Below, one piece after another: positions 541-53,755 of a stretch of 64,000 bases of DNA. The notes under the pieces were generated by a model, which was not told where the DNA came from, did not search any database, and saw only the letters and a program-made list of their open reading frames with translations. Source of the stretch: Macrostomum lignano (taxonomy: Eukaryota); NCBI GenBank assembly GCA_002269645.1, contig NIVC01001888.1, positions 136,021 to 200,020 on the forward strand, read 5' to 3'. The first letter of the stretch is position 1; every line of letters starts with the position of its first letter. The position numbers and the translations under genes were made by a program.

Positions 541-2083
541 GACTGCTCACAACTGAGCATCAATGCTCACAACTGAGCATCACTGCTCACAACTGAGCAT
601 CACTGCTCACAACTGAGCATCACTGCTCACAACTGAGCATCAATGCTCACACCTGAGAATCACTGCTCACAACTGAGCATCACTGCTCACAACTGAGCAT
701 CACTGCTCACAACTGAGAATCACTGCTCACAACTGAGAATCACTGCTCACAACTGAGCATCACTGCTCACAACTGAGCATCACTGCTCACAACTAAGCAT
801 CACTGCTCACAACTGAGCATCACTGCTCACAACTGAGAATCACTGCTCACACCTGAGAATCACTGCTCACAACTGAGCATCACTGCTCACAACTGAGAAT
901 CACTGCTCACAACTGAGAATCACTGCTCACAACTGAGCATCACTGATCACAACTGAACATCACTGATCACAACTGAGCATCACTGATCACAACTGAGCAT
1001 CACTGATCACAACTGAGAATCACTGCTCACAACTGAGCATCACTGCTCACAACTGAGAATCACTGCTCACAACTGAGCATCACTGCTCACAACTGAGCAT
1101 CACTGCTCACACCTGAGAATCACTGCTCACACCTGAGAATCACTGCTCACACCTGAGAATCACTGCTCACACCTGAGAATCACTGCTCACACCTGAGAAT
1201 CACTGCTCACAACTAAGCATCACTGCTCACAACTGAGAATCACTGCTCACAACTGAGCATCACTGCTCACAACTGAGAATCACTTCTCACAACTGAGAAT
1301 CACTGCTCACAACTGAGCATCACTGCTCACACCTGAGAATCACTGCTCACAACTGAGCATCACTGCTCACAACTGAGCATCACTGCTCACACCTGAGAAT
1401 CACTGCTCACACCTGAGAATCACTGCTCACAACTGAGAATCACTGCTCACAACTGAGAATCACTGCTCACAACTGAGAATCACTGCTCACAACTAAGCAT
1501 CACTGCTCACAACTGAGAATCACTGCTCACAACTAAGCATCACTGCTCACAACTGAGAATCACTGCTCACAACTAAGCATCACTGCTCACAACTAAGCAT
1601 CACTGCTCACAACTAAGCATCACTGCTCACACCTGAGAATCACTGCTCACAACTAAGCATCACTGCTCACAACTGAGCATCACTGCTCACAACTGAGCAT
1701 CACTGCTCACACCTGAGAATCACTGCTCACACCTGAGCATCACTGCTCACACCTGAGCATCACTGCTCACACCTGAGAATCACTGCTCACACCTGAGCAT
1801 CACTGCTCACACCTGAGAATCACTGCTCACACCTGAGAATCACTGCTCACACCTGAGCATCACTGCTCACAACTGAGCATCACTGCTCACACCTGAGAAT
1901 CACTGCTCACACCTGAGAATCACTGCTCACAACTGAGAATCACTGCTCACACCTGAGAATCACTGCTGACACCTGAGAATCACTGCTCACAACTGAGAAT
2001 CACTGCTCACAACTGAGAATCACTGCTCACAGCTGAGAATCACTGCTCACAACTGAGCATCACTGCTCACACCTGAGCATCAC
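541..2083. repeat. 20-bp satellite (cactgctcacaactgagcat), about 77 units
   Basis: Direct 20-bp periodicity with a few single-base variants. Confidence 0.98.
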
Positions 2084-2417
2084 TCCTTTCAGCAGATAAT
2101 CTAGGAGTACTACATGCAATTATAAGCAGCACTAACGACTAGGCGTTCTGTTGATTATGTAGGTCAACACAGCTACAAGGGTTCATGCTTGAATGCAGTG
2201 CAAACAAAGGCTATTAAGGTGATTGTCTTACACGCCAACTCATCCTAACTGAGAGCACCAATCCCAGTGACCCAGCCCAAGTCAAACAGTATTTCGGAGG
2301 CAGTTGCAAGTTTTTGTTGCTGTGATCTTTTTAAGTAGGTAAGTCTGGCGCTCACGTGCCAGCCCGGCAGTCCAAACAGAAGGCAGTCGGAGCGGAAAAA
2401 CGTGCCGATTTCGGCTG

Positions 2418-2994: not shown

Positions 2995-4375
2995 TGATTC
3001 TCAGTTGTGAGCAGTGATGCTCAGTTGTGAGCAGTGATTCTCAGTTGTGAGCAGTGATGCTCAGGTGTGAGCAGTGATGCTTAGTTGTGAGCAGTGATGC
3101 TTAGTTGTGAGCAGTGATGCTTAGTTGTGAGCAGTGATGCTCAGTTGTGAGCAGTGATTCTCAGTTGTGAGCAGTGATGCTCAGGTGTGAGCAGTGATTC
3201 TCAGGTGTGAGCAGTGATTCTCAGGTGTGAGCAGTGATTCTCAGTTGTGAGCAGTGATGCTCAGTTGTGAGCAGTGATTCTCAGTTGTGAGCAGTGATGC
3301 TCAGTTGTGAGCAGTGATTCTCAGTTGTGATCAGTGATGCTCAGTTGTGATCAGTGATGCTCAGTTGTGAGCAGTGATTCTCAGTTGTGAGCAGTGATTC
3401 TCAGTTGTGAGCAGTGATGCTCAGGTGTGAGCAGTGATGCTCAGTTGTGAGCAGTGATGCTCAGTTGTGAGCAGTGATTCTCAGGTGTGAGCAGTGATTC
3501 TCAGTTGTGAGCAGTGATGCTTAGTTGTGAGCAGTGATGCTTAGTTGTGAGCAGTGATTCTCAGTTGTGAGCAGTGATGCTCAGTTGTGAGCAGTGATTC
3601 TCAGTTGTGAGCAGTGATGCTCAGTTGTGAGCAGTGATGCTTAGTTGTGAGCAGTGATGCTTAGTTGTGAGCAGTGATGCTCAGTTGTGAGCAGTGATGC
3701 TCAGTTGTGAGCAGTGATGCTCAGGTGTGAGCAGTGATTCTCAGGTGTGAGCAGTGATTCTCAGGTGTGAGCAGTGATGCTCAGTTGTGAGCAGTGATTC
3801 TCAGGTGTGAGCAGTGATGCTCAGTTGTGAGCAGTGATGCTCAGTTGTGAGCAGTGATTCTCAGTTGTGAGCAGTGATGCTCAGTTGTGAGCAGTGATTC
3901 TCAGTTGTGATCAGTGATGCTCAGTTGTGATCAGTGATGCTCAGTTGTGATCAGTGATGCTCAGTTGTGATCAGTGATGCTCAGTTGTGAGCAGTGATTC
4001 TCAGTTGTGAGCAGTGATTCTCAGTTGTGAGCAGTGATGCTCAGGTGTGAGCAGTGATGCTCAGTTGTGAGCAGTGATGCTTAGTTGTGAGCAGCGATGC
4101 TCAGTTGTGAGCAGTGATGCTTAGTTGTGAGCAGTGATGCTCAGTTGTGAGCAGTGATGCTCAGTTGTGAGCAGTGATTCTCAGTTGTGAGCAGTGATTC
4201 TCAGTTGTGAGCAGTGATGCTCAGTTGTGAGCAGTGATGCTCAGTTGTGAGCAGTGATTCTCAGGTGTGAGCATTGATGCTCAGTTGTGAGCAGTGATGC
4301 TCAGTTGTGAGCAGTGATGCTCAGTTGTGAGCAGTGATGCTCAGTTGTGAGCATTGATGCTCAGTTGTGAGCAGT
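2995..4375. repeat. Same 20-bp satellite in opposite orientation, about 69 units
   Basis: Unit tcagttgtgagcagtgatgc. The variant pattern mirrors 541-1020 near the piggyBac side. Confidence 0.98.
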
Positions 4376-12282: not shown

Positions 12283-14739
12283 ATTTTTCATGATGCTAGC
12301 TGGCCTCAGTCAGGATATTCGAAATCAAATAAGATTCTTCTCACATGCAAAAGTTGTAGAAGATATATATACAGATTATTCAAATTTGACAGAAGTCTTG
12401 AAATTTAAATAATTGCAAGAGTTAAATAAAATTATTGATAGCTCAAATTAAATGACAATTGAGAACAAAATTCTGAGTGTCAAATTTAAAGTTGATGACA
12501 TATGCAATGATATAAAACTAGACATGGAAAGCATTGGCATAGAAATTGGCCTATTTGACATATATAAAAATATTGAATAATACCTATAAGGTATCCTCTC
12601 CTTTCCTTCTTTCTCATCAACTATTCTATCTTTGCTGTTTGTTTAATATCATTCATGCAAAATGATTTTCCTAATATGGCCTTAGCTACTAGTCATTTTG
12701 TATATTAACTATTAGTAACTAGTAACTAATAGTAAACTACTAAATAATGACTAATAGCTTTTGTATGTTAGCTACAAGTCAAAATTGTATACATGCATTA
12801 ATTTTTTAGAATTTTAAATTTACAAGTTTTAAAAACATTGTGACTTTGATAATTATACTTTTAAAATTGTCTTTTTGGCCTATTTGGCTTACATTTAAAT
12901 ACAATATAGGTAAAATAATAAATTTGTTAAAATAGAAAAAAAATTAATATAGTGACACAGTGAATACTTTTGCAAATGCAATAATATATTTATATATGCT
13001 GTTTATATAAGTACTATATTATGTCATATATATACATTATAGGCTTGTATTAAGATGTTATTCTTATTACCAATAGGCCTATTACCAAATATGTTATTGT
13101 CGAAATGACTAGTATTCTAAAGTGTCTGTGTCAATAATGTAAAATTCAAACTCAAGCACTTTTTAAACTTTCTTAGACATTCATTGACCCCTACTATATA
13201 TTTAACCAATCAAAGCAGGAAATTCTTCATTATTTAGCAGTGCTATTTAATGGTAAGAATATCTTCTATAATGGTACAAAAAGAAATTTGATAAAGAGAG
13301 CAATGGAAGAGTGGGTAGATTCTAAGGATGAAGACCTAAAAGAGATATAGGATAGTAAAGTCTAGGCTATATGATAATAAAAATTCACTTGGTCTTAGCA
13401 ATTCTTCTCTAGACTGTTGCTATAATGTAGAAAGCAGCCTTCTTGTATTTTCTTAGTTGACATTGCAATTATTTAGGTTGACATGACAACTTGACAATGA
13501 TTTGATCCACTACATTTTGTCTGCTACCTTTTCATCTACTAATTTTAAAGTAATTTTGTCCATAAATTTGGTCATTTTAAAAGCCAAATGCCAATGTGTA
13601 CTTCATACACCAAGCGCGCAAAGAAAAAAATTTGAACAATAAAGGCGCGAAGAAATAGTGGAATTTTTTACCAGAAAAGTGCACATAATGTCAGGTTTAA
13701 ATTTAGCAATGTAAACACTAGCGCCAATACTAATTTACTAAAGCTCCCACTAAGCCAAAAATTTTTAAGGAAGTTTTGCATGCACGCGCATTTTATTTTT
13801 TGCCTTCCGCGCAGAACTCGTTTTTTGTTTCTTTTGGGATGAATTTCCCCCGGGTGGTGGTTTCTGGCGTTTTCTATGAATATTAACAGAAATTTGGGTC
13901 TCAGTTAAATGTCACTAGACACAACGCAAATAAAACGGTTTATCAATATACTATATAAAACTTCGAATTTATTATAGTCTTAAACTAGCTTTATTAAGCT
14001 GACTGCAACCTAAATACCTTCAAAGCTATTTTTTAAATTCTTTTGACCGCGGCGGTTTGTTTTTCTGCTGGCAATTGTCGAGGTCCGGTACAACTCACGC
14101 AATCAAAAATGCTTATCTTAAATAAGCATTAAACTTAAAAATGTATAAATAGGTATAATAGAAGGGCTTGCACGTTGCCCATTAAATTGCCTCTGCTGAG
14201 CACACAGGGGCATAGTCTAGCTAGGGGTGGGTGGGGTCGCCTCAATCGGTTGGCAAAAGCATGTTGAACACCTTCGGGTCCATGAAAATTGCCCGCAGAC
14301 AAATTGCCCGAAGAGATTGCCTGCGAGCGAATTGCCCAAGGAGTTTTTTCCTGTCGAGGTTTGCCCGCAATGCCTTAGTAAGTCTCAATAAAGAGATTTA
14401 CCCGATCAAAACGTTTTGATAGTAACTGCAGCATAGCATATCAAATTGCATATTTTCTTGTAGGTATTTTTATATATACACGCAGGGGGTTACATCGTTC
14501 GGTGAGCTATTAATCTCTTTTTTAGACATACTAAGCATTGGGGGGGGGCAATGCAGACAGAATCTGCCACGTGGCAAAATACGCTGCAGGAAAATACATG
14601 CATTAAAGCGAGGCAAGCCTCGGCTGAAAAAATCTCACAGTGAGCAATTTACTCGCACGGTAAATTGCACTCAAGGACCTGTATGTAGCTATATACAGTG
14701 GCTAGTGGTCCTTGCGTGCGCGAGTAACGCGGTCTTTTG

Positions 14740-14880
14740 TCCTACCGGGTCAGCGGCGCCCGAGCACTTGATCCGGACAGAGCCTACTATAGCTATGTAT
14801 ACATGTACATGTACATGTACATAGCCTGCTGCCCTGAGCCGCTGCAGGATGTCCTGCTACTGACGCTGCAAGCACTGCGT
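14740..14880 (+). mobile_element. Small diverged remnant of the same LINE family, opposite orientation
   Basis: Translates ...DRAYY[microsatellite]ACCPEPLQDVLL, against AEAYCPEPLQDVLL in the adjacent LINE. Confidence 0.7.
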
Positions 14881-14953
14881 ATGTATGGTAGTGTACAGGG
14901 AAGGGCGGCTTGTACTGTTACTGTACTTGGTTGACCGACTAAATGAAATGTAA

Positions 14954-17900
14954 TAATAATAATAATAATAATAGTTACGCCCCACGCCAGCCACAGAAGT
15001 GGCCAAAAGGGGGGAGCGTAAAATCGCGCGTTTCAGAGCTAGGTCTCTAATGTGCTTCACACCGGCCGCCTGGCTGGGTGCTCACGCATCTTCAAAAAGG
15101 CGGTCGACGTAGCGGGCTGATCGTCCCTGGCCACGCCTGCGCGGTCCCTGCGGGGTCCACAGCAGGACGTCCTGCAGCGGCTCTGGGCAGTAGGCTTCGG
15201 CCCGGATGACATGTCCGGCCAGCCGCAGGCGCCGCTGACTCAGCAGGGCAGAAGGCCGCGTCAGGCCTGTGCGCTTGTACAGGGACTCGGTTGTCTCGCT
15301 GCCAGGGCCGCGGCGGGCGCCGAAAGCGGCGCGGACTAGGGCCGCATGTGCCGCGTCGAGCTGCGCCTCAAGCGCCCCGGTCAGCGTCCAGGTCTCAGCA
15401 TTGTACAGCAGGGCGGTCTCAACAACCGCCTGGAACAGCTGGGACCTGGCGTCGTCGGACAGGGCCTCGGAGAGCAGCACCGCCCGCACAGATCTTAAGG
15501 CAGCCCAGGCCTTGCCGCGCCGTCTCGCTAGGTCGTCGCCGAAGTCCGGCACCAGTCCGCCGAGGTAGACGAACTGAAGGCACTTCGGGAGCGACGTCCC
15601 GGGGCCGTCGCCGTCTCGAAGTCGAATCTCGGCGGGTAAATCATGCGGCACCGTCAGCACCTCGGTCTTCCTGGCGTTGATGACGAGACCGACCCTCGCC
15701 GCCGCTGCAGTCAAGCCGTCCAGCAGCCGTTGGGCGCCTTCGGCCGTCGAAGACAGCAGGGCGAGGTCGTCCGCGTAGCCAAGGACAGACAGTTTCTTTT
15801 CCGGGTGCCGTCTACTGGTGCGCCTTTGCAGCAGAAAGCCGTCCTCTGATGTCGGCAGGCCGGTCCTGAGCACCCAGTCCATCACCAGCACGAAGAGAAA
15901 GGGCGCCAGAGTGTCACCCTGTAGAACTCCGGACGTCGTGCTAAACAGGTCCGACGGTCCGTCTGGCGTCGCTACCGCGGCGGTGGTGTCCTGATACAGC
16001 GCCATGATGGCGGAGATCAGCTGCTGCGGCACGTTGTAGGCACGGAGAACGTGAGGCAGCGCGCCGCGCGTCACCGAGTCGAAGGCCTTGAGGAAGTCAA
16101 CAAAGATGACGATAAGGCTTGACTGGTGGATGCGCGCCTCCTCGATGATGCGGCGGAGGGCCAGGATCTGTGTCACCGTACCGCGACGGGGGCGGAACCC
16201 GTTCTGCTCGTACCGCAGGAACTAGTCCAGCACGGGCTGTAACCGTGCTAATAGCAACGGTTGAACAGCTTCGCGGTACAGGACATGAGCGAGATTCCAC
16301 GATGCTCCTCCTTCCGTGTAGTGCCCGGCTTCTTCGGGATGCCGACGATGTTGGCCTGGGTCCACTCGTGGGGCGCGGGGCCTCCCGCCAGGACGCCGTT
16401 CATCACGCGGGCCACCTCAGTGGCAACCCTTGTGACTCGCAGCGCCTCGACGGGGACCTCGTCCGGGCCGGGGGCGCGGCCTCCCGGAGCCCTGCGGGCG
16501 AATTCCACGACGTCGGTGCTGGTCACAGGACGGGTGTCGAAGTCCTCCTGCCGCGGCAGCGCCACCTCGGGGGGCAGCGGCATCTCGTTCGGCAGAGTCG
16601 GCGGCGGCGAAGAAGGTGCGCAGCTCGTTTCTGCGCTCTTCGGCCGTGTCGCCAGCCAGGTTGAGCGCCGTCTTCTTTTTGCGACCGGTTAGGGCGTTCA
16701 CGACCGGCCAGACGACCCTATTCTGCCGTTCAGGCCCAACGGAGGCGACTGCCCTGATTGCGTCGTCAACAGCGGCTTGCTGTCGACTAGCGTAGGCGTC
16801 TGCCAGGGCTTTCTCGGCATCGGATGTCGGTCGCCTGGCTCGTCGCAGCTGCTCGACTGTGCGGCGGGCCTCTCGGACCTCCGGGTCGCTCGCCCAAACC
16901 GGAAGTTGCCGTGACGCGGGCTCCATAAGCGGCAGAGTTTTAGCAGCGGCAGTGGTGATGGCTGAGCTGATTGTGGAGTAGTCTGGCGCCTGCGCAGATC
17001 CCAGGGCAGTCGCGAAGGTGTACGCAAAGTTGCTGAGGGTACCAGGGTCTTGCAAGGCGCGGAAAAATAGTCTCCTAGGGCGTTTTGGTGGCCTGTACAG
17101 CGGGTCAGAGAGCCTCAGGTCGCAGTAGAGAAGGCGATGGTCGGACCGGACAGCCAGGGGTTCCACTGTGTCACAGTTCTGCAGCCGACTGCGTTCGCGG
17201 TGTCGAACCAGCACGTGGTCAAGCTGTGCCAGGCGGGTCGTGGCGAGTCGGCCTCGCGCATTCTGTTTCCTTCGCTTGCAGCCGGCGAATGTTGCCAGCC
17301 GGTTGGGTGGTTTGCGGAAGCGCGTGTTGGCCGACACCAGGTCGAGCCTCGCCATCAGGTCCGCTAGCGCGGCGGTGTTGGCGTTCTGGCGTGGCGACAC
17401 AAACGGGCAGCGCTCGGACCGCGGTGCCACGGCGTTGAGGTCACCAAGCACCACCACAGTGTCGCGGTGCGCCACCGACTCGAGCTGCTCGGACAGGAGC
17501 TCGAAGAACTCCTGTGCCTCCTGCTGATGGGCAGCCGTGGGAGCGTACGCACAGAACAGCCGCGCATTGCAGCGGCGCAGCCTCACGTCCACGCGCAGCA
17601 GTCGGGCTGACAAGCTGACGCAGCAGACGCTCTCGCGTAGCCGTGGTCCGACGAGCGCGCCGACTCCTCCGTGGCCTCTGCTGTCCGCTGACGTGTAGTG
17701 CAGCGTCCAGCCGGCCCCCAGGTCTTCACGGTGAAGTCCAGACTCAGCAGTGATTGACAACTCCTGCAGCATGACGAGGTCTAGCCGCAGGTCAGATGCC
17801 AGCAGTGCGAGCATGCCCCTTCTCCAGGCGGACTTCAGTGTTCGGCAGTTAAAGGTGGCTAGTCTTAGAGCGCGGTTTGTAAAGGCTGGGGCCCGATGTT

Positions 17901-18281
17901 GGTGGGCCTCACGGTTCCCGGCGCCACCCGGCGGAGCCGACTGGACGGGGGTCGGCGGGTCAGAGTTGCCAGCAGACTGGCGAAGGCGGCCTTTCGTTCG
18001 TCCTCGCCGGTTGCGTTCCCTTCGCCGTTCAATGCGACGTCGGGTGCTTCGCTGTCCACGCCGTCCTCCTGTCCTGCCGCACTTAGCAGCCGCAGCACCA
18101 GGGCGCGGCTCTCCGTGTTGGCCGAGGCAAGCGCTGGGGCTCCAGCGTCACCAGGAGGCAGCGGCATTTATTTGCACCAGGGTGCATTTCTTTAGAGGTA
18201 TTTAAATTTCAAAAGTACCTTTTAAGTAAAGCATGCAATAAATTGAGTCTTCGCAGTAAGAGACCGTCTTTACGGCTTTAC
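14954..18281 (-). mobile_element. Full-length RTE-type non-LTR retrotransposon (APE endonuclease + RT) with SL at its 5' end; now inactive
   Basis: Endonuclease motifs (ATFNCRTL, LQE, LGDLNA, SDH) and RT motifs (QGDTLAP, YADD). (TAT)n tail and 9-bp TSD GAAATGTAA at 14945-14953 and 18282-18290. Frameshifts near 16590 and 16250, plus an in-frame TAG near 16225. Confidence 0.92.
18232..18275 (-). other. Genomic copy of the spliced-leader exon CCGTAAAGACGGTCTCTTACTGCGAAGACTCAATTTATTGCATG
   Basis: Matches the Macrostomum lignano SL as recalled (not database-checked). Ends in the flatworm-typical TGCATG. Followed by CT rather than a GT donor, so it is a retrocopy and not an SL RNA gene. Confidence 0.85.
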
Positions 18282-18482
18282 GAAATGTAAATAAATTTTA
18301 ATGCATGTTAGATTTGCTCACTTACATGTACGAGTATGTCTCGTAATGCAATTATGCTTAAAATAAAAATTCAACAGCCAAAAATTGTATTTTTCATTCA
18401 AACAATCAATAACTAACAAACGATAGTAATAGTAATATGATAGTACTGTACGTGCATGAGTGCATGTGTACTCAGTCAAGGC

Positions 18483-20095
18483 TTAAGCATAATCGTCGCT
18501 ATACCGCGAAGCGTTGTCATCTTCGGACAAGTCCGACAAGCGGGTCGCATTGCCGCGCAGCTTGCGCAAATCCGTGGCGGTCTCGTTCAGGCAGACCCGC
18601 TGGATATTGGTGCCGCACTCTTCGTACTCGGTCAGTAGGGCGTGCAGCTTCGGCCCGAATCGGCGCTGAGCCTCCTGCAGCCAGCGTCGGTGAAGCAGCG
18701 GCAGGTGGCGCGGCTTCTCTTCGAGTAGCTCTTCAAGCTGGCGCTGGCCTCGAGTCTCTGTGGCCAGCATTGCTCGCTCGTTGTCCATGTGCAACTGCTG
18801 GATGTTGGCAAAGTACGGGACAGCTCGTACAGTTAAGGGAATTTCCGGTTAGGCAGTTAGGGGGTCTTTCCGGTGGGACAGTTGAGGTAGTTTCCCTTGA
18901 GACAAATGAGAGACATTTTGGATGAGACAGTTAAACTGAAAGAGTAGTTTCCAGTGAGATTGTCAGAGGAGTTTCCAGAGACATTTCAGAGAAGTTCCGG
19001 TGAGACATTTCAGAGAAGTTCCGGTGAGACATTTCAGAGAATTTGCGGTGAGACATTTCAGAGAAGTTCCGGTGAGACATTTCAGAGAAGTTCCGGTGAG
19101 ACATTTCAGAGAATTTACGGTGAGACATTTCAGAGAATTTCCGGTGAGACATTTCAGAGAAGTTCCGGTGAGACATTTCAGGGAATTTCCGGTGAGACAT
19201 TTCAGAGAAGTTCCGGTGAGACATTTCAGAGAAGTTCCGGTGAGACATTTCAGAGAAGTTCCGGTGAGACATTTCAGAGAAGTTCCGGTGAGACATTTCA
19301 GAGAAGTTCCGGTGAGACATTTCAGGGAATTTCCGGTGAGACATTTCAGGGAATTTCCGGTGAGACTTTTCAGGGGATTTCCGATGAGACATTTCAGGGG
19401 ATTTCCGGTGAGACATTTCAGGGAATTTCCGGTGAGAAATTTCAGGGGATTTCCGATGAGACATTTCAGGGAATTTCCGGTGAGACATTTCAGGGGATTT
19501 CCGGTGAGACATTTCAGGGGATGTCTCGTGAGACATTTCAGGGAATTGCTGGTGAGGCAGTTGGGGTTTTCGGTGAGCAATTTCAAAGAATTTCCGGTGA
19601 GAAGTTTGGGACTTTCAGAGAATTCGACTTCCATGCAGTAATAAAACTTCAAATCGCCGACATAAAAGCTGACATCTAGCAAGAGCAATATCTCGTGCCT
19701 ATCAGGCGGGAACTACAATCATGCGATAAGCAGCAAGCTGCGGCTCACATCCTGCTGTGTTCCTACGCCTTGCAGCACGCGGTCGGCCCTCTCAAACAGC
19801 CGGTCGTAGCTGTCCCATTCGTCGAACATAGTATAGGCGAAATACTCTGGATAAGACAGTATAAAAAGCGCCAGAACGAAGAAGGTGCCGTACAACGCAA
19901 AGAACAGCAGATAAGGACTGTGCCAGATCTTCAGGGTGACAGTTTCTTCAATGTAATTCTGCACAAATTCCGTACTTAATAGTATCTGCTGGGCTACAGA
20001 TTCCATTTTGCATTCGCGCTTGTAGCACATGCTTGAGTTGGCAGTACTCCAGCAGGAACAGGTTGCAGAGATGACAGCTCGATAACAGCCAGCAG
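18483..20095 (-). CDS. Probable spliced gene for a small membrane protein of unknown family (exons about 20095-19747 and about 18800-18483)
   Basis: Two non-repetitive ORFs flank a repeat-filled intron, with a GTGAGC donor near 19746. Cys-rich N-part and one hydrophobic segment (YLLFFALYGTFFVLALFILSY). The acceptor and start are uncertain. Confidence 0.5.
18950..19620. repeat. 24-bp intronic minisatellite (gagacatttcagagaagttccggt)
   Basis: Direct periodicity. Confidence 0.95.
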
Positions 20096-22013: not shown

Positions 22014-25000
22014 TCAGTCAGAGCCGCAGCCGAACACTTTGAGGCTGCGGTCAAGCGAGCAGCTGACAATGGACCGGGCGTTGGTGCCGAAGCGCAGTCC
22101 AGTGACGGCGGCGGTGTGGTTGTCCAGCATGCAGAGCTCGTTGAACTGCTTGGTGTGGTACAGCCGGATGTCGCCGCCGCCAGCGGCCAGGTAAGTGCCG
22201 GAGTGATCGAAGGCCAGGGCCCTGGCGTGAGAGCTGGCCGGGCCGGAAGGCTGGCCGGATTCGGAGCCGCCCAGCTGCAGCACCTTGAAGTTCTTGAGCT
22301 TGCGCAGATCCCACAGCCGGACTGTGGAGTCCTCGGCGGCCGTGGCCAGGTAATAGCCGTTCTCAGAGAAGGCAAGCGCCGTCAACGGGGCGGTGTGCTG
22401 CTCAAAGTTCGTTAAGAACTTTTGCTCGCGAAGGTCCCACATTTTGACCTTGAAATTGGAATTCGTATAAGATAATTGTATTATTCATAACCGTGGGGTC
22501 TGATCAAGCCGAGTGGAGACAGATTAGAGATGGGAGGGGAATGCAGACACAGATTAGAGATGGGAGGGGAGTGCAGACACAGATTAGAGATGGGAGGGGA
22601 GTGCAGACACAGATTAGAGATGGGAGGGGAGTGCAGACACAGATTAGAGATAGGAGGGGAATGCAGACACAGATTAGAGATGGGAGGGGAATGCAGACAC
22701 AGATTAGAGATGGGAGGGGAATGCAGACACAGATTAGAGATGGGAGGGGAATGCAGACACAGATTAGAGATGGGAGGGGAATGCAGACACAGATTAGAGA
22801 TGGGAGGGGAATGCAGACACAGATTAGAGATGGGAGGGGAATGCAGACACAGATTAGAGATGGGAGGGGAGTGCAGACACAGATTAGAGATGGGAGGGGA
22901 GTGCAGACACAGATTAGAGATGGGAGGGGAGTGCAGACACAGATTAGAGATGGGAGGGGAGTGCAGACACAGATTAGAGATGGGAGGGGAATGCAGACAC
23001 AGATTAGAGATGGGAGGGGAATGCAGACACAGATTAGAGATGGGAGGGGAGTGCAGACACAGATTAGAGATGGGAGGGGAATGCAGACACAGATTAGAGA
23101 TGGGAGGGGAATGCAGACACAGATTAGAGATGGGAGGGGAGTGCAGACACAGATTAGAGATGGGAGGGGAATGCAGACACAGATTAGAGATGGGAGGGGA
23201 ATGCAGACACAGATTAGAGATGGGAGGGGAGTGCAGACACAGATTAGAGATGGGAGGGGAATGCAGACGCACAGAGCGGAGGGGAGGGGAATTCAGACAC
23301 ACAGAGCGGAGGGGAGGGGAATGCAGACACACAGAGCGGAGGGGAGGGGAATGCAGACACACAGAGCGGAGGGGAGGGGAATTCAGACACACAGAGCGGA
23401 GGGGAGGGGAATGCAGACACACAGAGCGGAGGGGAGGGGAATGCAGACACACAGAGCGGAGGGGAGGGGAATGCAGACACACAGAGCGGAGGGGAGGGGA
23501 ATGCAGACACACAGAGCGGAGGGGAGGGGAATGCAGACACACAGAGCGGAGGGGAGGGGAATGCAGACACACAGAGCGGAGGGGAGGGGAATGCAGACAC
23601 ACAGAGCGGAGACGGGAGGGGAATGCAGACACACAGAGCGGAGGGGAGGGGAATGCAGACACACAGAGCGGAGACGGGAGGGGAATGCAGACACACAGAG
23701 CGGAGGGGAGGGGAATGCAGACACACAGAGCGGAGGGGAGGGGAATGCAGACACACAGAGCGGAGGGGAGGGGAATGCAGACACACAGAGCGGAGGGGAG
23801 GGGATTGCAGGCCAACAACACTAGCGGATCAGTGCCTGCAACGCCCCTAATGGAATGGAACAATCAGATCCAATAAGACGCACCTGCGCATCCTGGGTGC
23901 CGGTGGCGGCAATCATGCCGTCCGGATGCAGCTGGGCGCAGGTGAGCGGCTGCTGTCCGGCCGGATCGGCCACTCGGACCAGCAGGCGGCCGGCGCGGAT
24001 GTCGGCAAATGCCCAAGTGCCGTCGCGCGAGCCGGACAGCAGGAAGTCGCCAGTCGGATGAACGGAGAGGGCGGTGACGGCGTCCTCGTGGGCGCGCAGC
24101 TGGAATTAGGCGGGGAAATTGAAGGTAAAAAATGCACACGCGAGACAAGTGATTAATGCATATGCATTTGGCATAGAGGCAATGATGATCAGGGAGAAAA
24201 TAGCAACCGACAGCTCAGCCGCAGCTATTGCGCAGCGCATCTGAAGGCTGCATACGGCTGTTCAGTCCAAGGTCTGGGGGGTCGCCACACACACATTCAA
24301 TTACCCCAACTAAAGCTGGCACCATTTTACAGCTGGATGAACTGAAGCAATGCAGAGTTAAAGTGTCTCGCTCAAGGACACAAATTGTTCCAGTGAGATC
24401 AGGAATCGAACCCCCGACCTTCAAGTCGTGAGCCCGACGCTCTAACCGCTAGGCTACAACCCCTCCCAAACCAAAAACCAAAAAGAAATCATCATTAGAA
24501 TACAAACCTGGGTGCGCACCGCCGCAGTGCGCGGATCCCACACTAGCACTAGAGAGTCCTGACCGCCGGTGAACACTAGATCCTCCTCGTAGGGGTGATA
24601 GGCCACCGAGGTGACCTTCTTAGTGTGTCCGTGCAGCACGCAGACCAGCTGTTGCGCATCTGTGTTGAACACCGCGGCAGTTTTATCGTTGCCGCCGGTG
24701 ACAACCCGGGCTGGATTGGCCAGGAAGGCGTCCAGACAGAGGATCCCCGGATTAGAGGCCGAGTGCAGGCCGATGTGGCTGGCCAGCTGCCTGTAGGCCG
24801 ACACCAACTCCACTGAGCACAGGCCTTCGGGCGCCGATTTGCCTCGCTGCTTGCGCTGCGCAGTGAGCTCCTTGGCCTTCTGCTCCAGTCGGCCCGTGAC
24901 AGCGTCTGACATGCCGGATGGTTCCTCTAGTGCGGCCGCTGCGGCAACCGCGGCCGTGGCCTGCTGGGCATCGCCGGCAGCGTGCTCCGGCGTCGGCGGC

Positions 25001-27534: not shown

Positions 27535-30429
27535 ATGGAAGACAGCAGCGCCATGGACTTGTCGTTGCCAAGCGGAAGCGATTCGATGCAAAACGTCAGC
27601 AGCAATCAGGAGTCATCCTACATACCAATTAACTGTTTAGGCAAAGGCGCTTTTGGCGAGGCATGGCTCTATAGGTAATTTTTTACTCCCTTTGAATGTG
27701 TAAAAGCTTTATATAGCTATAGATTTAAGCACCATAACCAAACCAAGACTTTCACCAACACAGAAAAACGGAAGAGAACGAAGAGCAGCTAGTGGTTTGG
27801 AAGATGATCAACCTGACCGGACTAGACGAGAGGCGAAGACGAGAAGCGCAAAATGAAATCGACGTATTGCACATGCTCGACCATCCGAACATAGTAGCTT
27901 ATTACAATCATTTCTTTGACGGCAACATACTACTAATAGAGATGGAATACGCCAATGGAGGATCGCTTTATCAGTTTATTGGCCAGTGCAACTCGCTGCT
28001 CAAAGAGGAAACTATAATTTGGTACTTCTTCCAGATGACAATGGCAATTCGGCACATTCACGAAGCCAGCATACTGCACAGGGATATTAAAACATTAAAT
28101 ATCTTCCTGACCAAGGCGGGCTTGATCAAACTGGGCGATTTCGGCATTGCCAAGGTACTGGGCAGCGATGAGATGGCAGAGACGTGCCAGGGCACGCCGT
28201 ACTACATGTCGCCTGAACTAGTACAAGGCAAGCGGTACAACTACAAAAGCGATATTTGGGCGCTCGGCTGTGTGCTATTTGAACTTCTGACTCTAAAGCG
28301 CGCATTCGATGCCACTAATCAACTGAAGTTAGCGCAGAACATTGTGCACACTGAGATTAGCCTATCCCTGGTGGATGAAAGCTATTCGGTCCAGCTGAAG
28401 GCGCTGCTCGGTGCTACACTGAGCAAAGAGCCGGAGGCGCGACCGTCGGCTAGCGAGATTCTAATAAATAAACTTTTTTCGGACGGCGAACGGATGCAGT
28501 CGCGTGTGCGCGAACTTCAACAGCAGAGCCGGCTGGCGAGGCCATCCAGCGCTGGTACCGACACAACGCCAGTAGTTACGTCCAAGACAACTGAAGTATT
28601 CTATTGGGGCGGCGGTAAGCAGACTCCAATAAAGATCGAACAGTTTGAGCGACAGAACAGCGCACTCCAGGTGGCTACGGGTAGTCACCACATGGCGGTA
28701 GTCACAATAGAGCGCGAGGTGTTCACTTGGTGTAACGTGCAGGGCTGCGCTAAACTTTGTGGCCAACTAGGCCATGGTGATCTGGCCTCCTATCGGACAC
28801 CAAAAAAAGTGGAAAAGCTAAACGGAGTGCCAATCGAAGAGGCTCGCTGCGGTGACGAATTCACAGTGCTGCGCACCGTTGAAGGCCAACTGTACGCATG
28901 CGGATCCAACTATCACGGCTGTCTCGGCGTGCCGCGCGAACAGCTAGAAGAGGAGACGGGCGACTCAGATCAGGCCCTAGAGCCTGTGCCCGTCCCTTTC
29001 TTTCTCAACCTGGAGGTGAAACGAGTAGCCTGCGGCGATGCCCATGTGCTGGCGGTGACGCGCCAATCGGAGGTGTTCGCCTGGGGCTGCGGCGAGTTCG
29101 GCCGGCTGGGGCTGAACGGCGAGGACAACTACGACACGCCGCAGCCGGTCAGCCTGCCAGTGAAACGGCAGCTTATAGTCGGCGCTTGCTGCGGCTCGGA
29201 CGGCAGCTTTTTACTAACTGATGGAGGCCGAGTGCTCGCCTGCGGCAGCAATGAGCACAACAAACTCGGCTTTAATAGCGTCGCCAAGGGACTAACAGCA
29301 GCTAATTCTACCTGCAGTTTTGACACTCCATGCGTTCACACGTTCAAGGTGGTGAAACCGCTGACAAAATATCGCGTGCGCCAGTTAAGCTGCGGTCGAT
29401 CGCACACAGCGGCTATCGACGATTGCAACCAGTTGCTCATGTTCGGCTCCAATCGGATGGGCGAACTTGGCCTAGGAGAGATGCGGCACAGAAACGGCGT
29501 ATTTAATATTGGCCGAGCTTGCGGTGGTAAGCGCTTCCTACGAGTGGCCTGCGGTGACGGGTTCACTGTTGCCTGCACAACGGACAATCACATCTATAGC
29601 TGGGGCAGGGCAGACAACGGCCGACTAGGCATTGAACTACAGGCAGCGAGCCTGCTCAATATGAACAAAGCCTCGGCCTCAGCGTGCGTCTCAACGCCGA
29701 GACCAATGTTCGGCTCGCTGCACCTGGTGGCCGATATCTCCAGCCGGCACTGGCACAGCCTCATGATTGCAGAGCGGGTGAGTTTGACGAGTTTGACGTT
29801 GGACAATAAGATTTACAAGTCTGTGAGAGTGCAGGCTGAGGGATCAGTACCTGAAAACCCATAGCCCACTCCCTGCAAACAAACAAGCTAACCGATCCCC
29901 ACACAACTCAAATCAGGTTCTGGAGCAGCGCACAGTCAGACGAGGCGGCGGTCGAACACAAGCCGGCGTGTCGGCATCATCGGCGGCGAGAAGCGCCGGC
30001 TCGACCCTGGATGACTTGTCCTCGCTGCCAGCCGATGACGAGCAGCAGCAAGTATCGTCGGCAAGCCTAGGCGTCACAGATAGCGTCGACGGTGGGAACA
30101 GTGGCGCCAGCAGCGCTAACAGAGGCGCCGGCCTGGATGGAACAGACACCTGCCCTAGCTGGCTGGCAGCCGAGCTGCAGCAGGCGGAGTTCATACCAAT
30201 GGATAACGAAGGTGGAGGAGGATTAGGAGTAGCAGCGGCGGCAGCATCAGACGGCGGCCTTGACGAACAAACACCAGAGCTAACTCCGCGCTGCAATTGC
30301 AACTGCCACTGTCACAGCCTAATTGGCCTAAAGGATCAGGAGATTGCCAGACTACAAGCGGAAGTAGCAAGACTGATGGCGCAGCTTAGCAAAGGAGACG
30401 AAAAAAACAATGGTGGATCAATGGATTGA
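27535..30429 (+). CDS. NEK9: NIMA-related kinase 9 (kinase + RCC1 repeats + coiled coil), 888 aa; exons 27535-27674, 27764-29777, 29917-30429
   Basis: [45 protein letters not shown]1 repeats, and the NEK9-type [17 protein letters not shown] motif. Exon phases are consistent (2667 nt). Confidence 0.93.
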
Positions 30430-49700: not shown

Positions 49701-52700
49701 CAGAGCAGAGATTACCTTAACGATTCGAACCACGGATTGTCCATCAAAATGCTTAAACGGTGGCCAATGTGACAAGCAGTCCATTGCATCGATGACCGTC
49801 CGCATCTGCCGCTGCTACGATGGCTTCGCTGGCGACCTGTGCGAGGCTCGCGTGCCCCGCAGCCCCGATCCGCTGACCTCCCTGCTGCTGCTCTGCCTCA
49901 GCAATGCCGCCTTCCTGCCTACCGTGGCCTTGGCCTTCCGCCGCGGCCTGCTGGTTGAAGCCCTCATCTACTGCGCTGCCATGCTGGCCTCCGCGGTGAG
50001 CCTCCCTCATCTTGGCTCTCCCATCCTGAATCTCCCATCCTGACTCCCCATCCTGACTCCCCATCCTGACTCCCCATCCTGACTCTCCCGTCCTGACTCT
50101 CCCGTCCTGACTCCCCATCCTGACTCCTCTCCATCCTGAGTCCCCATCATGAATTCTCTCCATCCTGACTCCCCATCATGATTCCCCATCCTGACACTTT
50201 CCCATCCTGACTCTCCCATCCTGACTCCCCATCCTGACTCCTCTCCATCCTGACTCCTCTCCCATCCTGACTCCTCTCCCATCCTGACTCCCCATCCTGA
50301 CTCCCCATCCTGACTCTCCCATCCTGACTCCCCATCCTGACTCTCCCATCCTGACTCCCCATCCTGACTCTCTCATCCTGACCCCTCCCATCCTGACTCT
50401 TTCCCATCCTGACTCTCCCATCCTGACTCTCCCATCCTGAATCTCCCATCCTGACTCTCCCATCCTGACTCCCCATCCTGACTCTCCCATCCTGACTCTC
50501 CCATCCTGACTCCCCATCCTAACTCCCCATCATGATTCCTACCCATCCTGACTCTCCATCATGATTCCTCTCCATCCTGACTCCCCATCATGACTCCCCA
50601 TCCTGACTCTCCCATCCTGAATCTTCCATCCTGAATCTCCCATCCTGACTCTCCCATCCTGACTCTCCCATCCTGAATCTCCCATCCTGAATCTCCCATC
50701 CTGAATCTCCCATCCTGACTCCCCATCCTGACTCCCCATCCTGACTCCCCATCCTGACTCCCCATCCTGACTCTCCCATCCTGACTCCCCATCCTGACTC
50801 CCCATCCTGACTCCCCATCCTGACTCTCCCATCCTGACTCCCCATCCTGACTCCCCATCCTGACTCCCCATCCTGACTCTCCCATCCTGAATCTCCCATC
50901 CTGAATCTCCCATCCTGACTCCCCATCCTGAATCTCCCATCCTGACTCCCCATCCTGACTCCCCATCCTGACTCCCCATCCTGACTCTCCCATCCTGAAT
51001 CTCCCATCCTGAATCTCCCATCCTGACTCCCCATCCTGACTCCCCATCCTGACTCCTACCCATTCTGACTCCTCCCCATCCTGACTCCTCCCCATCCTGA
51101 CTCCTCATCATGACTCCTATTCTGACTCCAATCCTGTCTCCCGCATCCAAAATCTTCCATCTTGACTCTCTCCTCTTGACTCCCTCTCTGACACTCCCTG
51201 ACCCTGACTCTTCCACCTCGTAACTAATCCTCATTGACCCTTACTGTCCCTGACCCTCAATCTGCCCCTCATCTCCATCTTGAACCGCATCTCCCTGGCA
51301 TTACCAGTTTTACCACGCCTGCGACAACAACTACGTGAATCAGCTGTGCGTCTTCCAATTCGATACTCTTGGCAAGCTGGACTTTCTCGGCGCTTTTCTC
51401 AGCCTATGGGTTACTCTACTCCTACTGGTGGACCTGACGCCGCAGTTGAAACAGCTGGCGCAAACTGCCGGCTCGCTGTTCCTAATGATTGGCGTGCTGA
51501 TCAATCGGACTAGCTTTGTTATAATTGCTGTCCCGCTGGGTGTCGGCTTTGCGGCGCTAATCCTGTCCTGGGTGAGGGCTGTGCCGCAGATTATCTCATT
51601 ATTTGCTCAGTTATGATTATCAAGTGAAAAGTATTAGTTAAACGAAATCGGAGCACTACTCTAGAGCATAGATCCTTTATTCTCTAGATCAGCAATACCA
51701 TTGAGCTCAACGCAGCAATGAAAAAATCCGCGACATCAAAAACTTTTCAGTAGTGTGAACGCGCATGGTTGCTATTTTTTGTTTATGAAAGAGACAAGTG
51801 AAGCAACAGCTGCATCAAGCGTTGCGCTGTTGTCAAATGAGTAGTGAAGAAGATGACTGATTTCGCTTAGTTGACTTTAAACCCGCGGAACACACTCCCC
51901 CCGTTCCTCACCCATGGACACGCGTTCCTCACCCATGGACATGCGTTCCTCACCCATGGACACACGTTCCTCACCCATGGACACACGTTCCTCACCCATG
52001 GACACACGTTCCTCACCCTCGGACACACGTTCCTCACCCATGGACACACGTTCCTCACCCATGGACACACGTTCCTCACCCATGGACACACGTTCCTCAC
52101 CCTTGGACACATGTTCCTCACCCATGGACACACGTTCCTCACCCTTGGACACACGTTCCTCACCCATGGACACGCGTTCCTCACCCATGGACACACGTTC
52201 CTCACCCATGGACACACGTTCCTCACCCATGGACACACGTTTCTCACCCATGGACACACGTTCCTCACCCATGGACATACGTTCCTTACCTATGGACATA
52301 CGTTCCTCACCCATAGACACACGTTCCTCACCCTTGGACACACGTTCCTCACCCTTGGACACACGTTCCTCATGCACCCATGGACACACGTTCCTCACCC
52401 ATGGACACATGTTCCTCACCTATGGACACACGTTCCTCACCCATGGACACACGTTCCTCACCCATGGACACACGTTCCTCACCCATGGACATACGTTCCT
52501 TACCTATGGACATACGTTCCTCACCCATAGACACACGTTCCTCACCCTTGGACACACGTTCCTCACCCTTGGACACACGTTCCTCACCCTTGGACACACG
52601 TTCCTCACCCATGGACACATGTTCCTCACCTATGGACACACGTTCTTCACCCATGGACACACGTTCCTCACCCGCAGACACACGTTCCTTACCTATGGAC

Positions 52701-53755
52701 ACACGTTCTTCACCCATGGACACACGTTCCTCACCCGCAGACACACGTTCCTTACCCATGGACACACGTTCCTCACCCTTGGACACACGTTCCTCACCCA
52801 TGGACACATGTTCCTCACCTATGGACACACGTTCCTCACCCTTGGACACACGTTCCTCACCCGCAGACACACGTTCCTTACCTATGGACACACGTTCCTC
52901 ACCCTTGGACACACGTTCCTCACCCATGGACACATGTTCCTCACCTATGGACACACGTTCTTCACCCATGGACACACGTTCCTCACCCGCAGACACACGT
53001 TCCTTACCTATGGACACACGTTCCTCACCCTTGGACACACGTTCCTCACCCATGGACACACGTTCCTCACCTATGGACACACGTTCTTCACCCTTGGACA
53101 CACGTTCCTCACCCATGGACACACGTTCCTCACCCATGGACACGTTCCCCACCCATGGACACGTTCCTCACCCATGGACACACGTTCCTTACCCATGGAT
53201 TGTCTGAAGTTTGCTACAGTATAACTTGCAATGCAAAATTTTGACTAAGTTTTTTGATTTTCGATTTTTTATTTGAATAAGTTTTAAATTTTTATTTTTT
53301 ATTTATTTCTGAATTGACATCACTTTGATTCGATAATTATTTAGACCTGCCGTTGCTACACAAACAAGCGCTGCTATCCGCCGCGGCGGCTCATTCTAAC
53401 CAGCCTGCTTCCTGGCGGCTGCCTCGCCCTAGCCGGATTCGCCATGTTCGCCCTGCTGAACACGCAGTCCAATTACTATTTAGTGCACTCCGGCTGGCAC
53501 TGCTGCGCAGCATTTGCTATTCTTTTGTTTCTAATACCGCTCGATCGGGTCCGGTTTCTACCGCGCAACCGCGTTGATGCCGCTTCGCCGTTCGAATCTG
53601 GCGACGCTGGCGCCGTTCGAAACTGCGGCATCGATCGCTGCTTCGTCTTGACCAGCCGCGGCGTCGGCAACGGCGACCAGTGTTGCCAAGATTCCAATGT
53701 ACACGGTACACCAAATTTGGTCAACTACAGGATGTCTCGGGTGCACGTAATCTGA
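43785..53755 (+). CDS. TMEM8: TMEM8/PGAP6-family protein (EGF-like domain + multi-pass CREST domain); exons 43785-44024, 47132-47262, 47719-48103, 48484-48821, 49704-49995, 51308-51571, 53345-53755
   Basis: PHPPAGVWYLAI, EGF-like CLNGGQC...CRCYDGFAGDLC, LLLCLSNAAFLP, FYHACD and HSGWH. All GT-AG junctions are phase-consistent. The true start or an upstream exon is uncertain, and the C-terminal tail is replaced after 53679. Confidence 0.85.
44385..44815. repeat. About 26-bp minisatellite (ataagcatattcctagaaacctcccg); related array at 46590-46990
   Basis: Direct periodicity. Both arrays have the same orientation and are split by a TIR element. Confidence 0.9.
44835..46577. mobile_element. Non-autonomous element with near-perfect TIRs of about 390 bp, in a TMEM8 intron
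   Basis: 44835-45223 and 46186-46577 are near-identical inverted copies. No TSD or transposase found. Confidence 0.85.
47305..47630. repeat. 15-bp intronic minisatellite (gattcgagcttatga)
   Basis: Direct periodicity. Confidence 0.9.
48850..49512. repeat. Purine-rich intronic repeat of about 19-20 bp (gagatgaagggagaggcaa); mirrored at 63880-64000
   Basis: Direct periodicity. Confidence 0.9.
50025..51130. repeat. 12-13-bp intronic repeat (catcctgactccc); mirrored and longer at 61170-63375
   Basis: Direct periodicity. Confidence 0.95.
51905..53195. repeat. 21-bp intronic minisatellite (cacccatggacacacgttcct); mirrored and shorter at 59992-60382
   Basis: Direct periodicity. Confidence 0.95.

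What the first reader, a model, noticed from the sequence alone, without database searches (positions are those of the whole stretch)
14945..18290. A LINE retrotransposed from a spliced-leader-capped RNA
Seen: the 9-bp TSD (GAAATGTAA) encloses, 5' to 3' on the minus strand, a short GTAAAG stutter, the complete 44-nt SL, about 64 nt of leader, the APE-RT coding region and a (TAT)n tail. The SL is therefore inside the insertion. Known: trans-splicing adds SL to mRNA and removes the outron; relic SLs mark retrogenes in dinoflagellates; NeSL and SLACS/CRE elements insert into SL genes. Inference: this RTE-type element is itself SL trans-spliced. New copies would lose their promoter and splice acceptor and carry a DNA-encoded SL. 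That implies a life cycle dependent on a master copy or on host read-through, which I am not aware of being described for flatworm LINEs.
Basis: partly seen in the sequence, partly recalled or inferred. Interest (0 to 1): 0.9.

Follow-up and report, generated by a model that had tools for sequence, protein, structure and literature searches.

The report
Dead flatworm LINE carrying a spliced leader
One dead flatworm jumping gene (an RTE-like LINE) was copied into the genome from an RNA that already carried the worm's trans-spliced leader, a clean example of something already suspected in parasitic flatworms rather than a new kind of life cycle.

Summary
On the minus strand a 9-bp target-site duplication (TTACATTTC, 18290-18282 and 14953-14945) encloses, in order:
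- a 5-nt filler, GTAAA;
- the complete 45-nt Macrostomum spliced leader (SL), 18276-18232;
- a 64-nt leader;
- one APE+RT reading frame;
- a (TAT)n tail.

The SL matches the published sequence exactly. It stops at the exon/donor boundary, and none of the SL RNA intron follows it. So this copy was reverse-transcribed from an SL-capped, trans-spliced RNA.

The copy is dead, with three frameshifts, two premature stops and a lost stop codon.

The wider inference, that the family is routinely trans-spliced and depends on a master copy, could not be tested. No other copy of this family is in the window or in any collection I could reach. Eleven contigs of related families, and 80 loci fetched from metagenomes, carry no SL.

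The 45 nt next to the SL are AT-rich (22% GC against 66% for the element body). They are unrelated to the upstream DNA of relatives and may be flank transduced from a source locus.

The idea is not new for flatworms. SL sequences encoded in the genome and fused to transposable elements were reported in Schistosoma mansoni (2018). In 2025, 597 SL-like loci associated with LTR and LINE elements were reported across parasitic flatworms, with the same explanation proposed.

The parts
18282..18290 (-). 5' target-site duplication, TTACATTTC
   Evidence: The 9-mer occurs only twice in the window, at both ends of the element.
18277..18281 (-). 5-nt filler GTAAA between the TSD and the SL; it repeats SL nt 4-8
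   Evidence: Read directly. It does not match the DNA upstream of a genuine SL RNA gene, which reads CTTTG|CCGT in L085.
18232..18276 (-). Complete Macrostomum spliced leader (45 nt, GCCGTAAAG...TTGCATG), encoded in the DNA
   Evidence: Exact match to the published SL. 45/45 identical to the SL exon of the SL RNA gene in L085, with identity ending at the donor site.
18187..18231 (-). 45-nt AT-rich spacer of unknown origin (CTTTAC...AAAGAAA); it holds the 10-codon uORF opened by the SL's AUG
   Evidence: 22% GC against 66% for the element body. Similarity to the upstream DNA of five relatives is no better than for shuffled sequence.
18168..18186 (-). Remnant of the 5' hairpin that precedes the start codon in related LINE families (TGCAC/GTGCA)
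   Evidence: Stems of about 8-14 bp with different sequences sit at the same place in L001, L002/L083, L086, L089 and L091. Only 5 bp remain here.
15019..18167 (-). Single APE+RT reading frame, starting at the ATG at 18167. The APE domain is at about 17865-17116 and the RT domain at about 16349-15550. The frame is broken by 3 frameshifts, TAG at 16224-16222 and TGA at 15084-15082, and the original stop is lost.
   Evidence: Three-frame translation, Pfam, tblastn with P0001/P0003/P0004, coordinates.
14974..15018 (-). Short 3' UTR
   Evidence: It lies between the end of protein homology and the tail.
14954..14973 (-). (TAT)n microsatellite tail
   Evidence: Read directly. Relatives end in (TTG)n, (TAA)n or (TTA)n tails.
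14945..14953 (-). 3' target-site duplication, TTACATTTC (its first TTA could belong to the tail)

Best explanation
This is one full-length, now inactive copy of an RTE-like LINE, made by target-primed reverse transcription of an RNA that carried the host spliced leader at its 5' end.

Shown:
- The DNA-encoded SL is complete.
- It ends exactly at the SL exon boundary.
- It lies inside the target-site duplication.
- The 3' end is the LINE's own UTR and microsatellite tail, not poly(A).

Inferred:
- A source LINE copy was transcribed by RNA polymerase II as part of a longer transcript, either read-through from a host unit or its own transcript.
- The trans-spliceosome joined the SL to an acceptor 64 nt upstream of the LINE start codon.
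- The LINE's reverse transcriptase copied this RNA to its very 5' end, added a short stutter (GTAAA), and the cDNA was joined to the target.
- The 45 AT-rich nt next to the SL are probably flank of the source locus carried along (5' transduction), not LINE sequence. If so, the acceptor belonged to the host, and the event need not be a regular step of the element's life cycle.
- The new copy has no evident promoter or acceptor and has since decayed.
For: - SL identity and uniqueness.
- A genuine SL RNA gene (L085) continues ...GCATG|GTAAGACACC with three hairpins and an Sm-like site. The window shares 45/45 nt with its exon and nothing before or after it.
- The TSD 9-mer is found only at the two ends.
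- APE+RT frame, with the start codon and the hairpin before it retained as in relatives.
- A LINE-type microsatellite tail, as in relatives.
- Spacer composition and lack of homology to relatives.
- Up to 30% of M. lignano genes are SL trans-spliced, so the machinery is widely active (PMC8629364).
- The same explanation was proposed for SL-transposable-element fusions in S. mansoni and in other parasitic flatworms.
Against: - There is only one copy. No source locus, no acceptor and no SL-LINE junction reads could be examined.
- The origin of the spacer is unproven. It could be the family's own 5' UTR.
- Relatives from other, unidentified hosts show no SL.
- The window comes from an assembly whose read support I cannot check.
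Confidence: 0.7

Rival explanations
1. Regular, family-level SL trans-splicing. In this reading the LINE family has no promoter, routinely gains its cap and 5' end by SL trans-splicing, and most daughter copies carry a DNA-encoded SL.
For: - This copy carries an SL.
- Three related families have, just 5' of the conserved hairpin, tandem 16-17-nt units that each contain TATTTTCAG. This fits the published acceptor motif [T/C]TNCAG.
- Flatworm RTE elements are known to be cut out of co-transcripts (Perere-3 twister-variant ribozyme, PMC8501958).
Against: - No second copy of this family is available.
- Eleven contigs of related families and 80 loci fetched from metagenomes contain no SL.
- The closest relatives (L001, L086) show neither an SL nor a TTTTCAG array.
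- The spacer looks like foreign flank.
- The hosts of the relatives are unknown.
Confidence: 0.15
2. Template-switch chimera. The reverse transcriptase finished, or nearly finished, the LINE RNA and jumped onto an unrelated SL-capped host mRNA 45 nt from its SL junction. In that case the SL plus spacer come from a different RNA molecule, as in a U6/L1-type chimera.
For: - The spacer is unrelated to the upstream DNA of relatives and differs sharply in composition.
- The left arm of the 5' hairpin is incomplete at the spacer/LINE boundary.
- This enzyme stutters at 5' ends: the GTAAA filler here, and possibly the 5' tandem units in relatives.
- LINE chimeras with other RNAs are well documented (10.1101/2025.02.02.635956, listed).
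Against: - Jumps usually land on the 3' end of the acceptor RNA. Landing 45 nt from the 5' end of an mRNA is an unlikely position.
- A jump onto the SL RNA itself is excluded, because no intron sequence follows the SL.
Confidence: 0.1
3. The SL was already at the target, either because the LINE landed beside an existing SL relic or SL gene, or because it targets SL genes as NeSL, SLACS and CRE do. Alternatively, the junction is an assembly artefact.
For: LINEs that target SL genes exist. The assembly is rich in repeats.
Against: - The TSD lies outside the SL.
- No SL RNA intron or other SL-gene sequence is on either side.
- The endonuclease is of APE type, not the REL type of the SL-gene-targeting LINEs.
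- The SL is oriented and positioned exactly as the 5' end of the element's RNA.
Confidence: 0.05

Closest known systems
Genome-encoded SL fused to transposable elements in parasitic flatworms (S. mansoni, Boroni et al. 2018, PMC5832876; 24 species, Calvelo et al. 2025, PMC12582326)
   Same: SL exon sequence encoded in the DNA and joined to transposable elements (Calvelo et al. name LTR and LINE elements; Boroni et al. give no class), with no SL RNA features. Both papers propose integration of retrotransposon transcripts that had received the SL.
   Different: Those reports are lists of loci, mostly with partial SLs. They give no junction anatomy, and the authors allow for assembly chimeras. 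Here the SL is complete, the exon boundary is exact, a TSD encloses it, and the host is a free-living macrostomid.
Dinoflagellate retrogenes with relic DinoSL (PMC6050394, PMC5585692, PMC12014239)
   Same: A DNA-encoded SL at the 5' end marks a copy made from a trans-spliced RNA.
   Different: Those are host-gene retrocopies, often with several truncated relic SLs in tandem from repeated cycles. Here the retrocopied RNA is the LINE itself, with one full SL and no relics downstream.
SL-gene-specific LINEs (NeSL-1, SLACS, CRE, CZAR)
   Same: A LINE physically joined to SL sequence.
   Different: Those elements have a restriction-like endonuclease and insert into the SL RNA gene, so SL-gene sequence flanks them on both sides. 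Here the endonuclease is APE type, the SL is inside the TSD, and no SL-gene sequence follows it.
U6/L1 and other LINE-RNA template-switch chimeras
   Same: A foreign RNA segment at the 5' end of a LINE insertion, within one TSD.
   Different: In those chimeras the small RNA is present through its own 3' end. Here only the spliced exon (45 of about 109 nt) is present, ending at the donor site.
Promoterless LINEs released from co-transcripts by 5' ribozymes (R2 HDV-like, PMC3774820; flatworm RTE Perere-3 twister variant, PMC8501958)
   Same: An RTE-type or R2-type element depends on outside transcription and needs an RNA-processing step to define its 5' end.
   Different: In this copy the 5' end was defined by the host trans-spliceosome, not by self-cleavage. 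No Rfam ribozyme family was detected at E <= 1.
LINE-1 5' transduction (my own knowledge, not checked here)
   Same: Flank upstream of a source copy is carried into the daughter insertion when transcription starts upstream.
   Different: That the 45-nt spacer is such flank is only inferred. The source locus was not found.

Membership tests
RTE-clade LINE | Single ORF with an N-terminal APE endonuclease and an RT, and no other recognised domain | tested here: met
   Pfam finds only Exo_endo_phos and RVT_1. Relatives have one ORF of 930-1050 aa.
RTE-clade LINE | Compact size (about 3.2 kb), very short UTRs, and a 3' tail of short tandem repeats instead of poly(A) | tested here: met
   About 3.2 kb from hairpin to tail. 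3' UTR of about 45 nt and a (TAT)n tail. Relatives end in (TTG)n, (TAA)n or (TTA)n.
RTE-clade LINE | RT groups with RTE-1, BovB, SR2 or Perere-3 in a phylogeny | not tested
   No named RTE reference sequences were available in the tools. Database hits carry only generic names.
Retrocopy of an SL trans-spliced RNA | DNA-encoded SL identical to the species SL and ending exactly at the exon/donor boundary | tested here: met
Retrocopy of an SL trans-spliced RNA | No SL RNA intron, Sm site or SL-gene upstream sequence next to the SL | tested here: met
   In the alignment with the SL RNA gene of L085, similarity is confined to the 45-nt exon.
Retrocopy of an SL trans-spliced RNA | The target-site duplication encloses the SL together with the retrocopied body and its 3' tail | tested here: met
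   and direct reading. The duplication is 6-9 bp because of the overlap with the tail.
Retrocopy of an SL trans-spliced RNA | A source locus with an AG acceptor at the junction, and RNA reads with a non-encoded SL | not testable with these tools
   The source genome and its RNA-seq are not in the reachable collections.
SL-gene-targeting LINEs (NeSL/SLACS/CRE) | Restriction-like endonuclease and site-specific insertion within SL RNA genes | tested here: not met
   APE-type endonuclease. No SL-gene sequence flanks the element, and the SL lies inside the TSD.
snRNA-LINE template-switch chimera (U6/L1 type) | The small RNA is present up to its own 3' end at the junction | tested here: not met
   Only the spliced exon is present. 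A jump onto another SL-capped mRNA is not excluded.
LINE with a 5' self-cleaving ribozyme (HDV-like or twister) | A recognisable ribozyme fold at the 5' end | tested here: inconclusive
   No Rfam hit at E <= 1 over 14500-18800. A conserved 5' hairpin exists. The invariant GCCGC/GCGGC pairings lie in coding sequence and carry no information.

The most novel reading that the evidence does not exclude
This lineage of RTE-like flatworm LINEs may be built to be SL trans-spliced. In that reading the elements have no promoter and ride host transcripts. They present one or several TATTTTCAG acceptors just upstream of a conserved 5' hairpin and start codon, and they receive cap and 5' end from the SL. 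An array of acceptors would let daughter copies keep an acceptor even after the RNA was spliced at the first one. The window copy would then be a direct fossil of that RNA.
Probability: 0.15. Interest if true: 0.8.

Novelty: new member of a known kind. Interest (0 to 1): 0.45.

Why it matters
The copy gives unusually clean structural proof that a LINE RNA can be SL trans-spliced and still complete retrotransposition: a full SL, an exact exon boundary and an enclosing TSD. Earlier flatworm papers only suggested this and partly attributed it to assembly errors.

It also has practical uses. SL sequences in Macrostomum genomes cannot be taken as SL RNA genes or as gene 5' ends without checking for LINE bodies. 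Ustyantsev and Berezikov note one such mis-assignment. DNA-encoded SLs could also serve as tags for retrocopies, as they do in dinoflagellates.

Whether trans-splicing is an adaptive way for promoterless LINEs to gain a cap and a 5' end remains open, and it is testable with public Macrostomum data.

Tried and rejected
- Other copies in the window: blastn of the element against the window gave only itself and a 57-nt old fragment. The SL occurs once.
- Other copies of the family elsewhere: the best protein hit is 74% identical. The exact ORFs of the window are not on record. The family's 5' junctions therefore could not be tabulated.
- SL in relatives: blastn-short of the SL and the leader against 82 loci gave only chance 9-14-nt hits. 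The SL's terminal 12-mer was absent from eight further relative contigs.
- SL in public collections: no hit in viral contigs. One hit in the prokaryote genome set proved to be a flatworm SL RNA gene contaminating a bin, which served as the reference gene.
- TSDs in relatives' contigs: none found, so their 5' ends are not defined.
- Ribozyme at the 5' end: no Rfam hit. The consensus fold of the first 150 nt rests on invariant coding nucleotides and was set aside.
- Wasik et al. 2015 could not be read.
- Rejected: SL RNA gene or pseudogene, NeSL-type targeted insertion, and a dinoflagellate-type tandem relic (no partial SL downstream of the full one).
Full report
**Observation**

Read on the minus strand, the region 18290-14945 contains, in order:
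- TTACATTTC (18290-18282);
- GTAAA (18281-18277);
- GCCGTAAAGACGGTCTCTTACTGCGAAGACTCAATTTATTGCATG (18276-18232);
- a 64-nt leader (18231-18168);
- an ATG at 18167 that opens an endonuclease/reverse-transcriptase frame;
- a short 3' UTR;
- (TAT)n (14973-14954);
- TTACATTTC again (14953-14945).

The 9-mer TTACATTTC occurs exactly twice in 64 kb, at the two ends of the element. Because the tail is (TAT)n and related elements also end in ...TA before the flank, the first three bases of the 3' copy may belong to the tail. The duplication is therefore 6-9 bp. Its 5' copy still lies only 5 nt from the start of the SL, which chance would rarely give.

**Is it the spliced leader?**

Yes.
- The 44-mer is letter for letter the trans-splicing leader reconstructed from the M. 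lignano transcriptome (PMC5173321).
- Its last 35 nt are the SL used by Ustyantsev and Berezikov (PMC8629364).
- SLs assembled from RNA of M. cliftonense (45 nt, beginning GCCGTAAAG) and M. hystrix match it at every base they cover (PMC10468722 supplement).

The SL places the window in Macrostomum but does not fix the species.

A scan of the prokaryote genome collection for the SL found one contig, L085, filed as a Flavobacteriaceae bin. It carries a U1 snRNA gene (151.7 bits). About 300 bp downstream is a textbook SL RNA gene...CTTTG|CCGTAAAG...TTGCATG|GTAAGACACC..., with three hairpins and an Sm-like AUAUUUUUAG. It is flatworm DNA in a bacterial bin, and it served as the reference gene.

Aligned with it, the window is identical over the 45 nt from G to ATG and unrelated on both sides. 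Two things follow.
- The SL in the window has 45 nt. The 'stutter' is a 5-nt filler, GTAAA, that repeats SL nt 4-8.
- The SL in the window stops exactly at the splice donor, with no intron, no Sm site and no SL-gene upstream sequence. That is the signature of a spliced product, not of an SL RNA gene, a pseudogene, or a jump onto SL RNA.

**The element**

A conceptual translation has Pfam Exo_endo_phos and RVT_1 and nothing else.

Its relatives are single-ORF proteins of 930-1050 aa on contigs of 3.1-4.2 kb from ENA, JGI and Logan assemblies. The best is 74% identical. UniRef proteins of M. lignano reach 65%. The size, the single APE+RT frame, the very short UTRs and the microsatellite tails fit the RTE clade. 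I did not test this by phylogeny.

The copy is dead.
- The N-terminal frame conserved in relatives (HGEPR...AAAAK...RRIERRRERNRRGR) is out of frame with the ATG, so there is a frameshift within the first 20 codons.
- Two more frameshifts lie near 16673-16591 and 16257.
- There are in-frame stops: TAG at 16224-16222 and TGA at 15084-15082.
- Homology runs past the TGA to about 15019, where the original stop is lost.

Indels could be assembly errors. The two nonsense substitutions are less likely to be.

**What lies between the SL and the ORF**

In every related family I could fetch, a hairpin sits immediately before the start codon. Its stem sequence differs from family to family:
- L001: ATATTTGCAC/GTGCAAATAT;
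- L002, L083 and L088: ATATTTTCAC/GTGAAAATAT;
- L086: TTTATTTATACGCC/GGCGTATAGATAAA;
- L089: TTTCACAC-TTCG-GTGTcGAAA;
- L091: TATTTTCAC/GTGGAAATA.

For the four that I folded, z-scores are -5 to -6.5 against shuffles. In the window only TGCAC/GTGCA is left. The right arm (GTGCAAAT) is as in L001, but the left arm is not complementary.

The 45 nt between this remnant and the SL are 22% GC, against 66% for the element body. They align with the upstream DNA of five relatives no better than shuffled sequence does.

My reading is that LINE sequence begins at or just before the hairpin, and that the spacer is flank of the source locus carried along. This is an inference. The spacer could also be a family-specific 5' UTR.

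The SL's own AUG opens a 10-codon uORF that ends in the spacer, before the LINE ATG.

**Mechanism**

Shown: an RNA with the SL at its 5' end and the LINE's own 3' UTR and (UAU)n tail at its 3' end was copied completely and integrated, creating a target-site duplication.

Inferred:
- The RNA was a polymerase II transcript containing a LINE copy.
- It was trans-spliced at an acceptor 64 nt upstream of the LINE ATG.
- The LINE's reverse transcriptase used the LINE 3' end as usual, ran to the cap, and re-copied a few terminal nucleotides (GTAAA) before the cDNA was joined.

Trans-splicing is common in these worms, with up to 30% of genes affected and acceptor motif [T/C]TNCAG. A LINE sitting in a host transcription unit has a fair chance of being spliced in this way.

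**Rivals**

- Jump onto SL RNA: excluded by the exact exon boundary.
- Jump from the LINE RNA onto an unrelated SL-capped mRNA, 45 nt from its SL: cannot be excluded. It would explain the foreign-looking spacer and the broken hairpin arm. It needs an unusual landing position, so I give it about 0.1.
- SL already present at the target, or NeSL/SLACS-type targeting: contradicted by the TSD, the APE endonuclease and the absence of SL-gene sequence.
- Assembly artefact: cannot be checked without reads.

**Family level**

- The window holds one copy and one SL.
- The protein database holds nothing closer than 74%.
- The window's exact ORFs are not on record.
- None of the 82 related loci first fetched has an SL. 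The SL's terminal 12-mer is also absent from eight further relative contigs.
- The hosts of the related contigs are unknown, so their lack of this SL is weak evidence either way.

One observation does lean towards a link between this LINE lineage and splicing. Three related families carry tandem 16-17-nt units directly 5' of the hairpin, each containing TATTTTCAG: L002, L083 and L088; L089; and L091, with nine units. This fits the published acceptor motif. All of these contigs begin inside the array, so what lies upstream is unknown. The arrays could equally be promoter monomers or products of 5' stuttering by the reverse transcriptase. The two closest relatives of the window element (L001, L086) have no such array.

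**Comparison with the literature**

- Boroni et al. 2018 found 32 extra SL loci in the S. mansoni genome, six merged to transposable elements. [quoted passage not shown]
- Calvelo et al. 2025 discarded 597 SL-like loci associated mainly with LTR and LINE elements in parasitic flatworms. [quoted passage not shown]
- Ustyantsev and Berezikov noted that the sequence first published as the M. lignano SL RNA in fact maps to the 5' end of a 3.1-kb gene model, Mlig013257.g1. That is a LINE-sized unit with a DNA-encoded SL and may be another case. I could not check it.
- Relic SLs in dinoflagellates mark host-gene retrocopies.
- Flatworm RTE Perere-3 is cut out of co-transcripts by a twister-variant ribozyme (PMC8501958). 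That flatworm RTEs depend on outside transcription is therefore established.

Against this background the window copy is a new and unusually clean member of a known kind.

**Verdict**

The core interpretation, that this copy derives from an SL-capped RNA, is well supported (0.7 for trans-splicing of a LINE-containing transcript followed by retrotransposition). The claimed life cycle and the claimed novelty are not supported by what could be tested. Interest is 0.45.

Noticed in passing
window 18168-18186 (-); L001 174-200; L002 21-45; L083 66-91; L086 44-75; L089 24-50; L091 137-160: A hairpin directly before the start codon is kept in six related LINE families, with different stem sequences (covariation). 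Stems are about 8-14 bp; the four relatives folded give z -5 to -6.5. Only 5 bp survive in the window copy. Its function is unknown; it could be a 5'-end, translation or processing signal.
   Followed up: partly
L083 1-65, L088 1-65, L002 1-20, L089 1-16, L091 1-136: Tandem 16-17-nt units, each containing TATTTTCAG, lie just 5' of that hairpin in three families (up to nine units). The motif fits the published Macrostomum trans-splice acceptor [T/C]TNCAG. All of these contigs start inside the array.
   Followed up: partly
L085 (JAGQZA010000190.1) 1121-1283 and 1589-1700: A contig filed under a Flavobacteriaceae metagenome bin carries a eukaryotic U1 snRNA gene and a complete Macrostomum-type SL RNA gene. 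This is flatworm DNA contaminating a bacterial bin.
   Followed up: yes
window 14830-14907 (+): A short fragment (26 aa, the conserved ...YCPEPLQDVLL... region) of an older related LINE lies in the opposite orientation, 40-115 bp from the insertion site.
   Followed up: partly
window 18234-18202 (-): The AUG at the end of the SL opens a 10-codon uORF (MLYLKGTFEI*). It ends in the spacer, 35 nt before the LINE start codon.
   Followed up: no
window 27792-29864 (+): An uninterrupted 690-aa ORF has a protein kinase domain followed by RCC1 repeats (a kinase-plus-RCC1 layout as in NEK9). It is probably a host gene or a retrocopy of one.
   Followed up: partly
window 542-2084 and 2995-4375; also 22519-23785, 50008-51182, 51902-53199, 61091-63388: Much of the window is minisatellite arrays with 13-30-nt units. 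The first two arrays are reverse complements of each other and flank about 900 bp.
   Followed up: no
L087 640-700; L090 340-395: A more distant subgroup of the same LINE lineage has a 5' UTR of at least 400 nt, with TGACGTCA-type motifs just before the ATG. This suggests an internal promoter in those families.
   Followed up: no
literature: PMC8629364 (Mlig013257.g1, scaf577:45663-48770): The sequence first published as the M. lignano SL RNA maps to the 5' end of a 3.1-kb gene model with a DNA-encoded SL. The unit is LINE-sized and may be another SL-tagged retrocopy.
   Followed up: no
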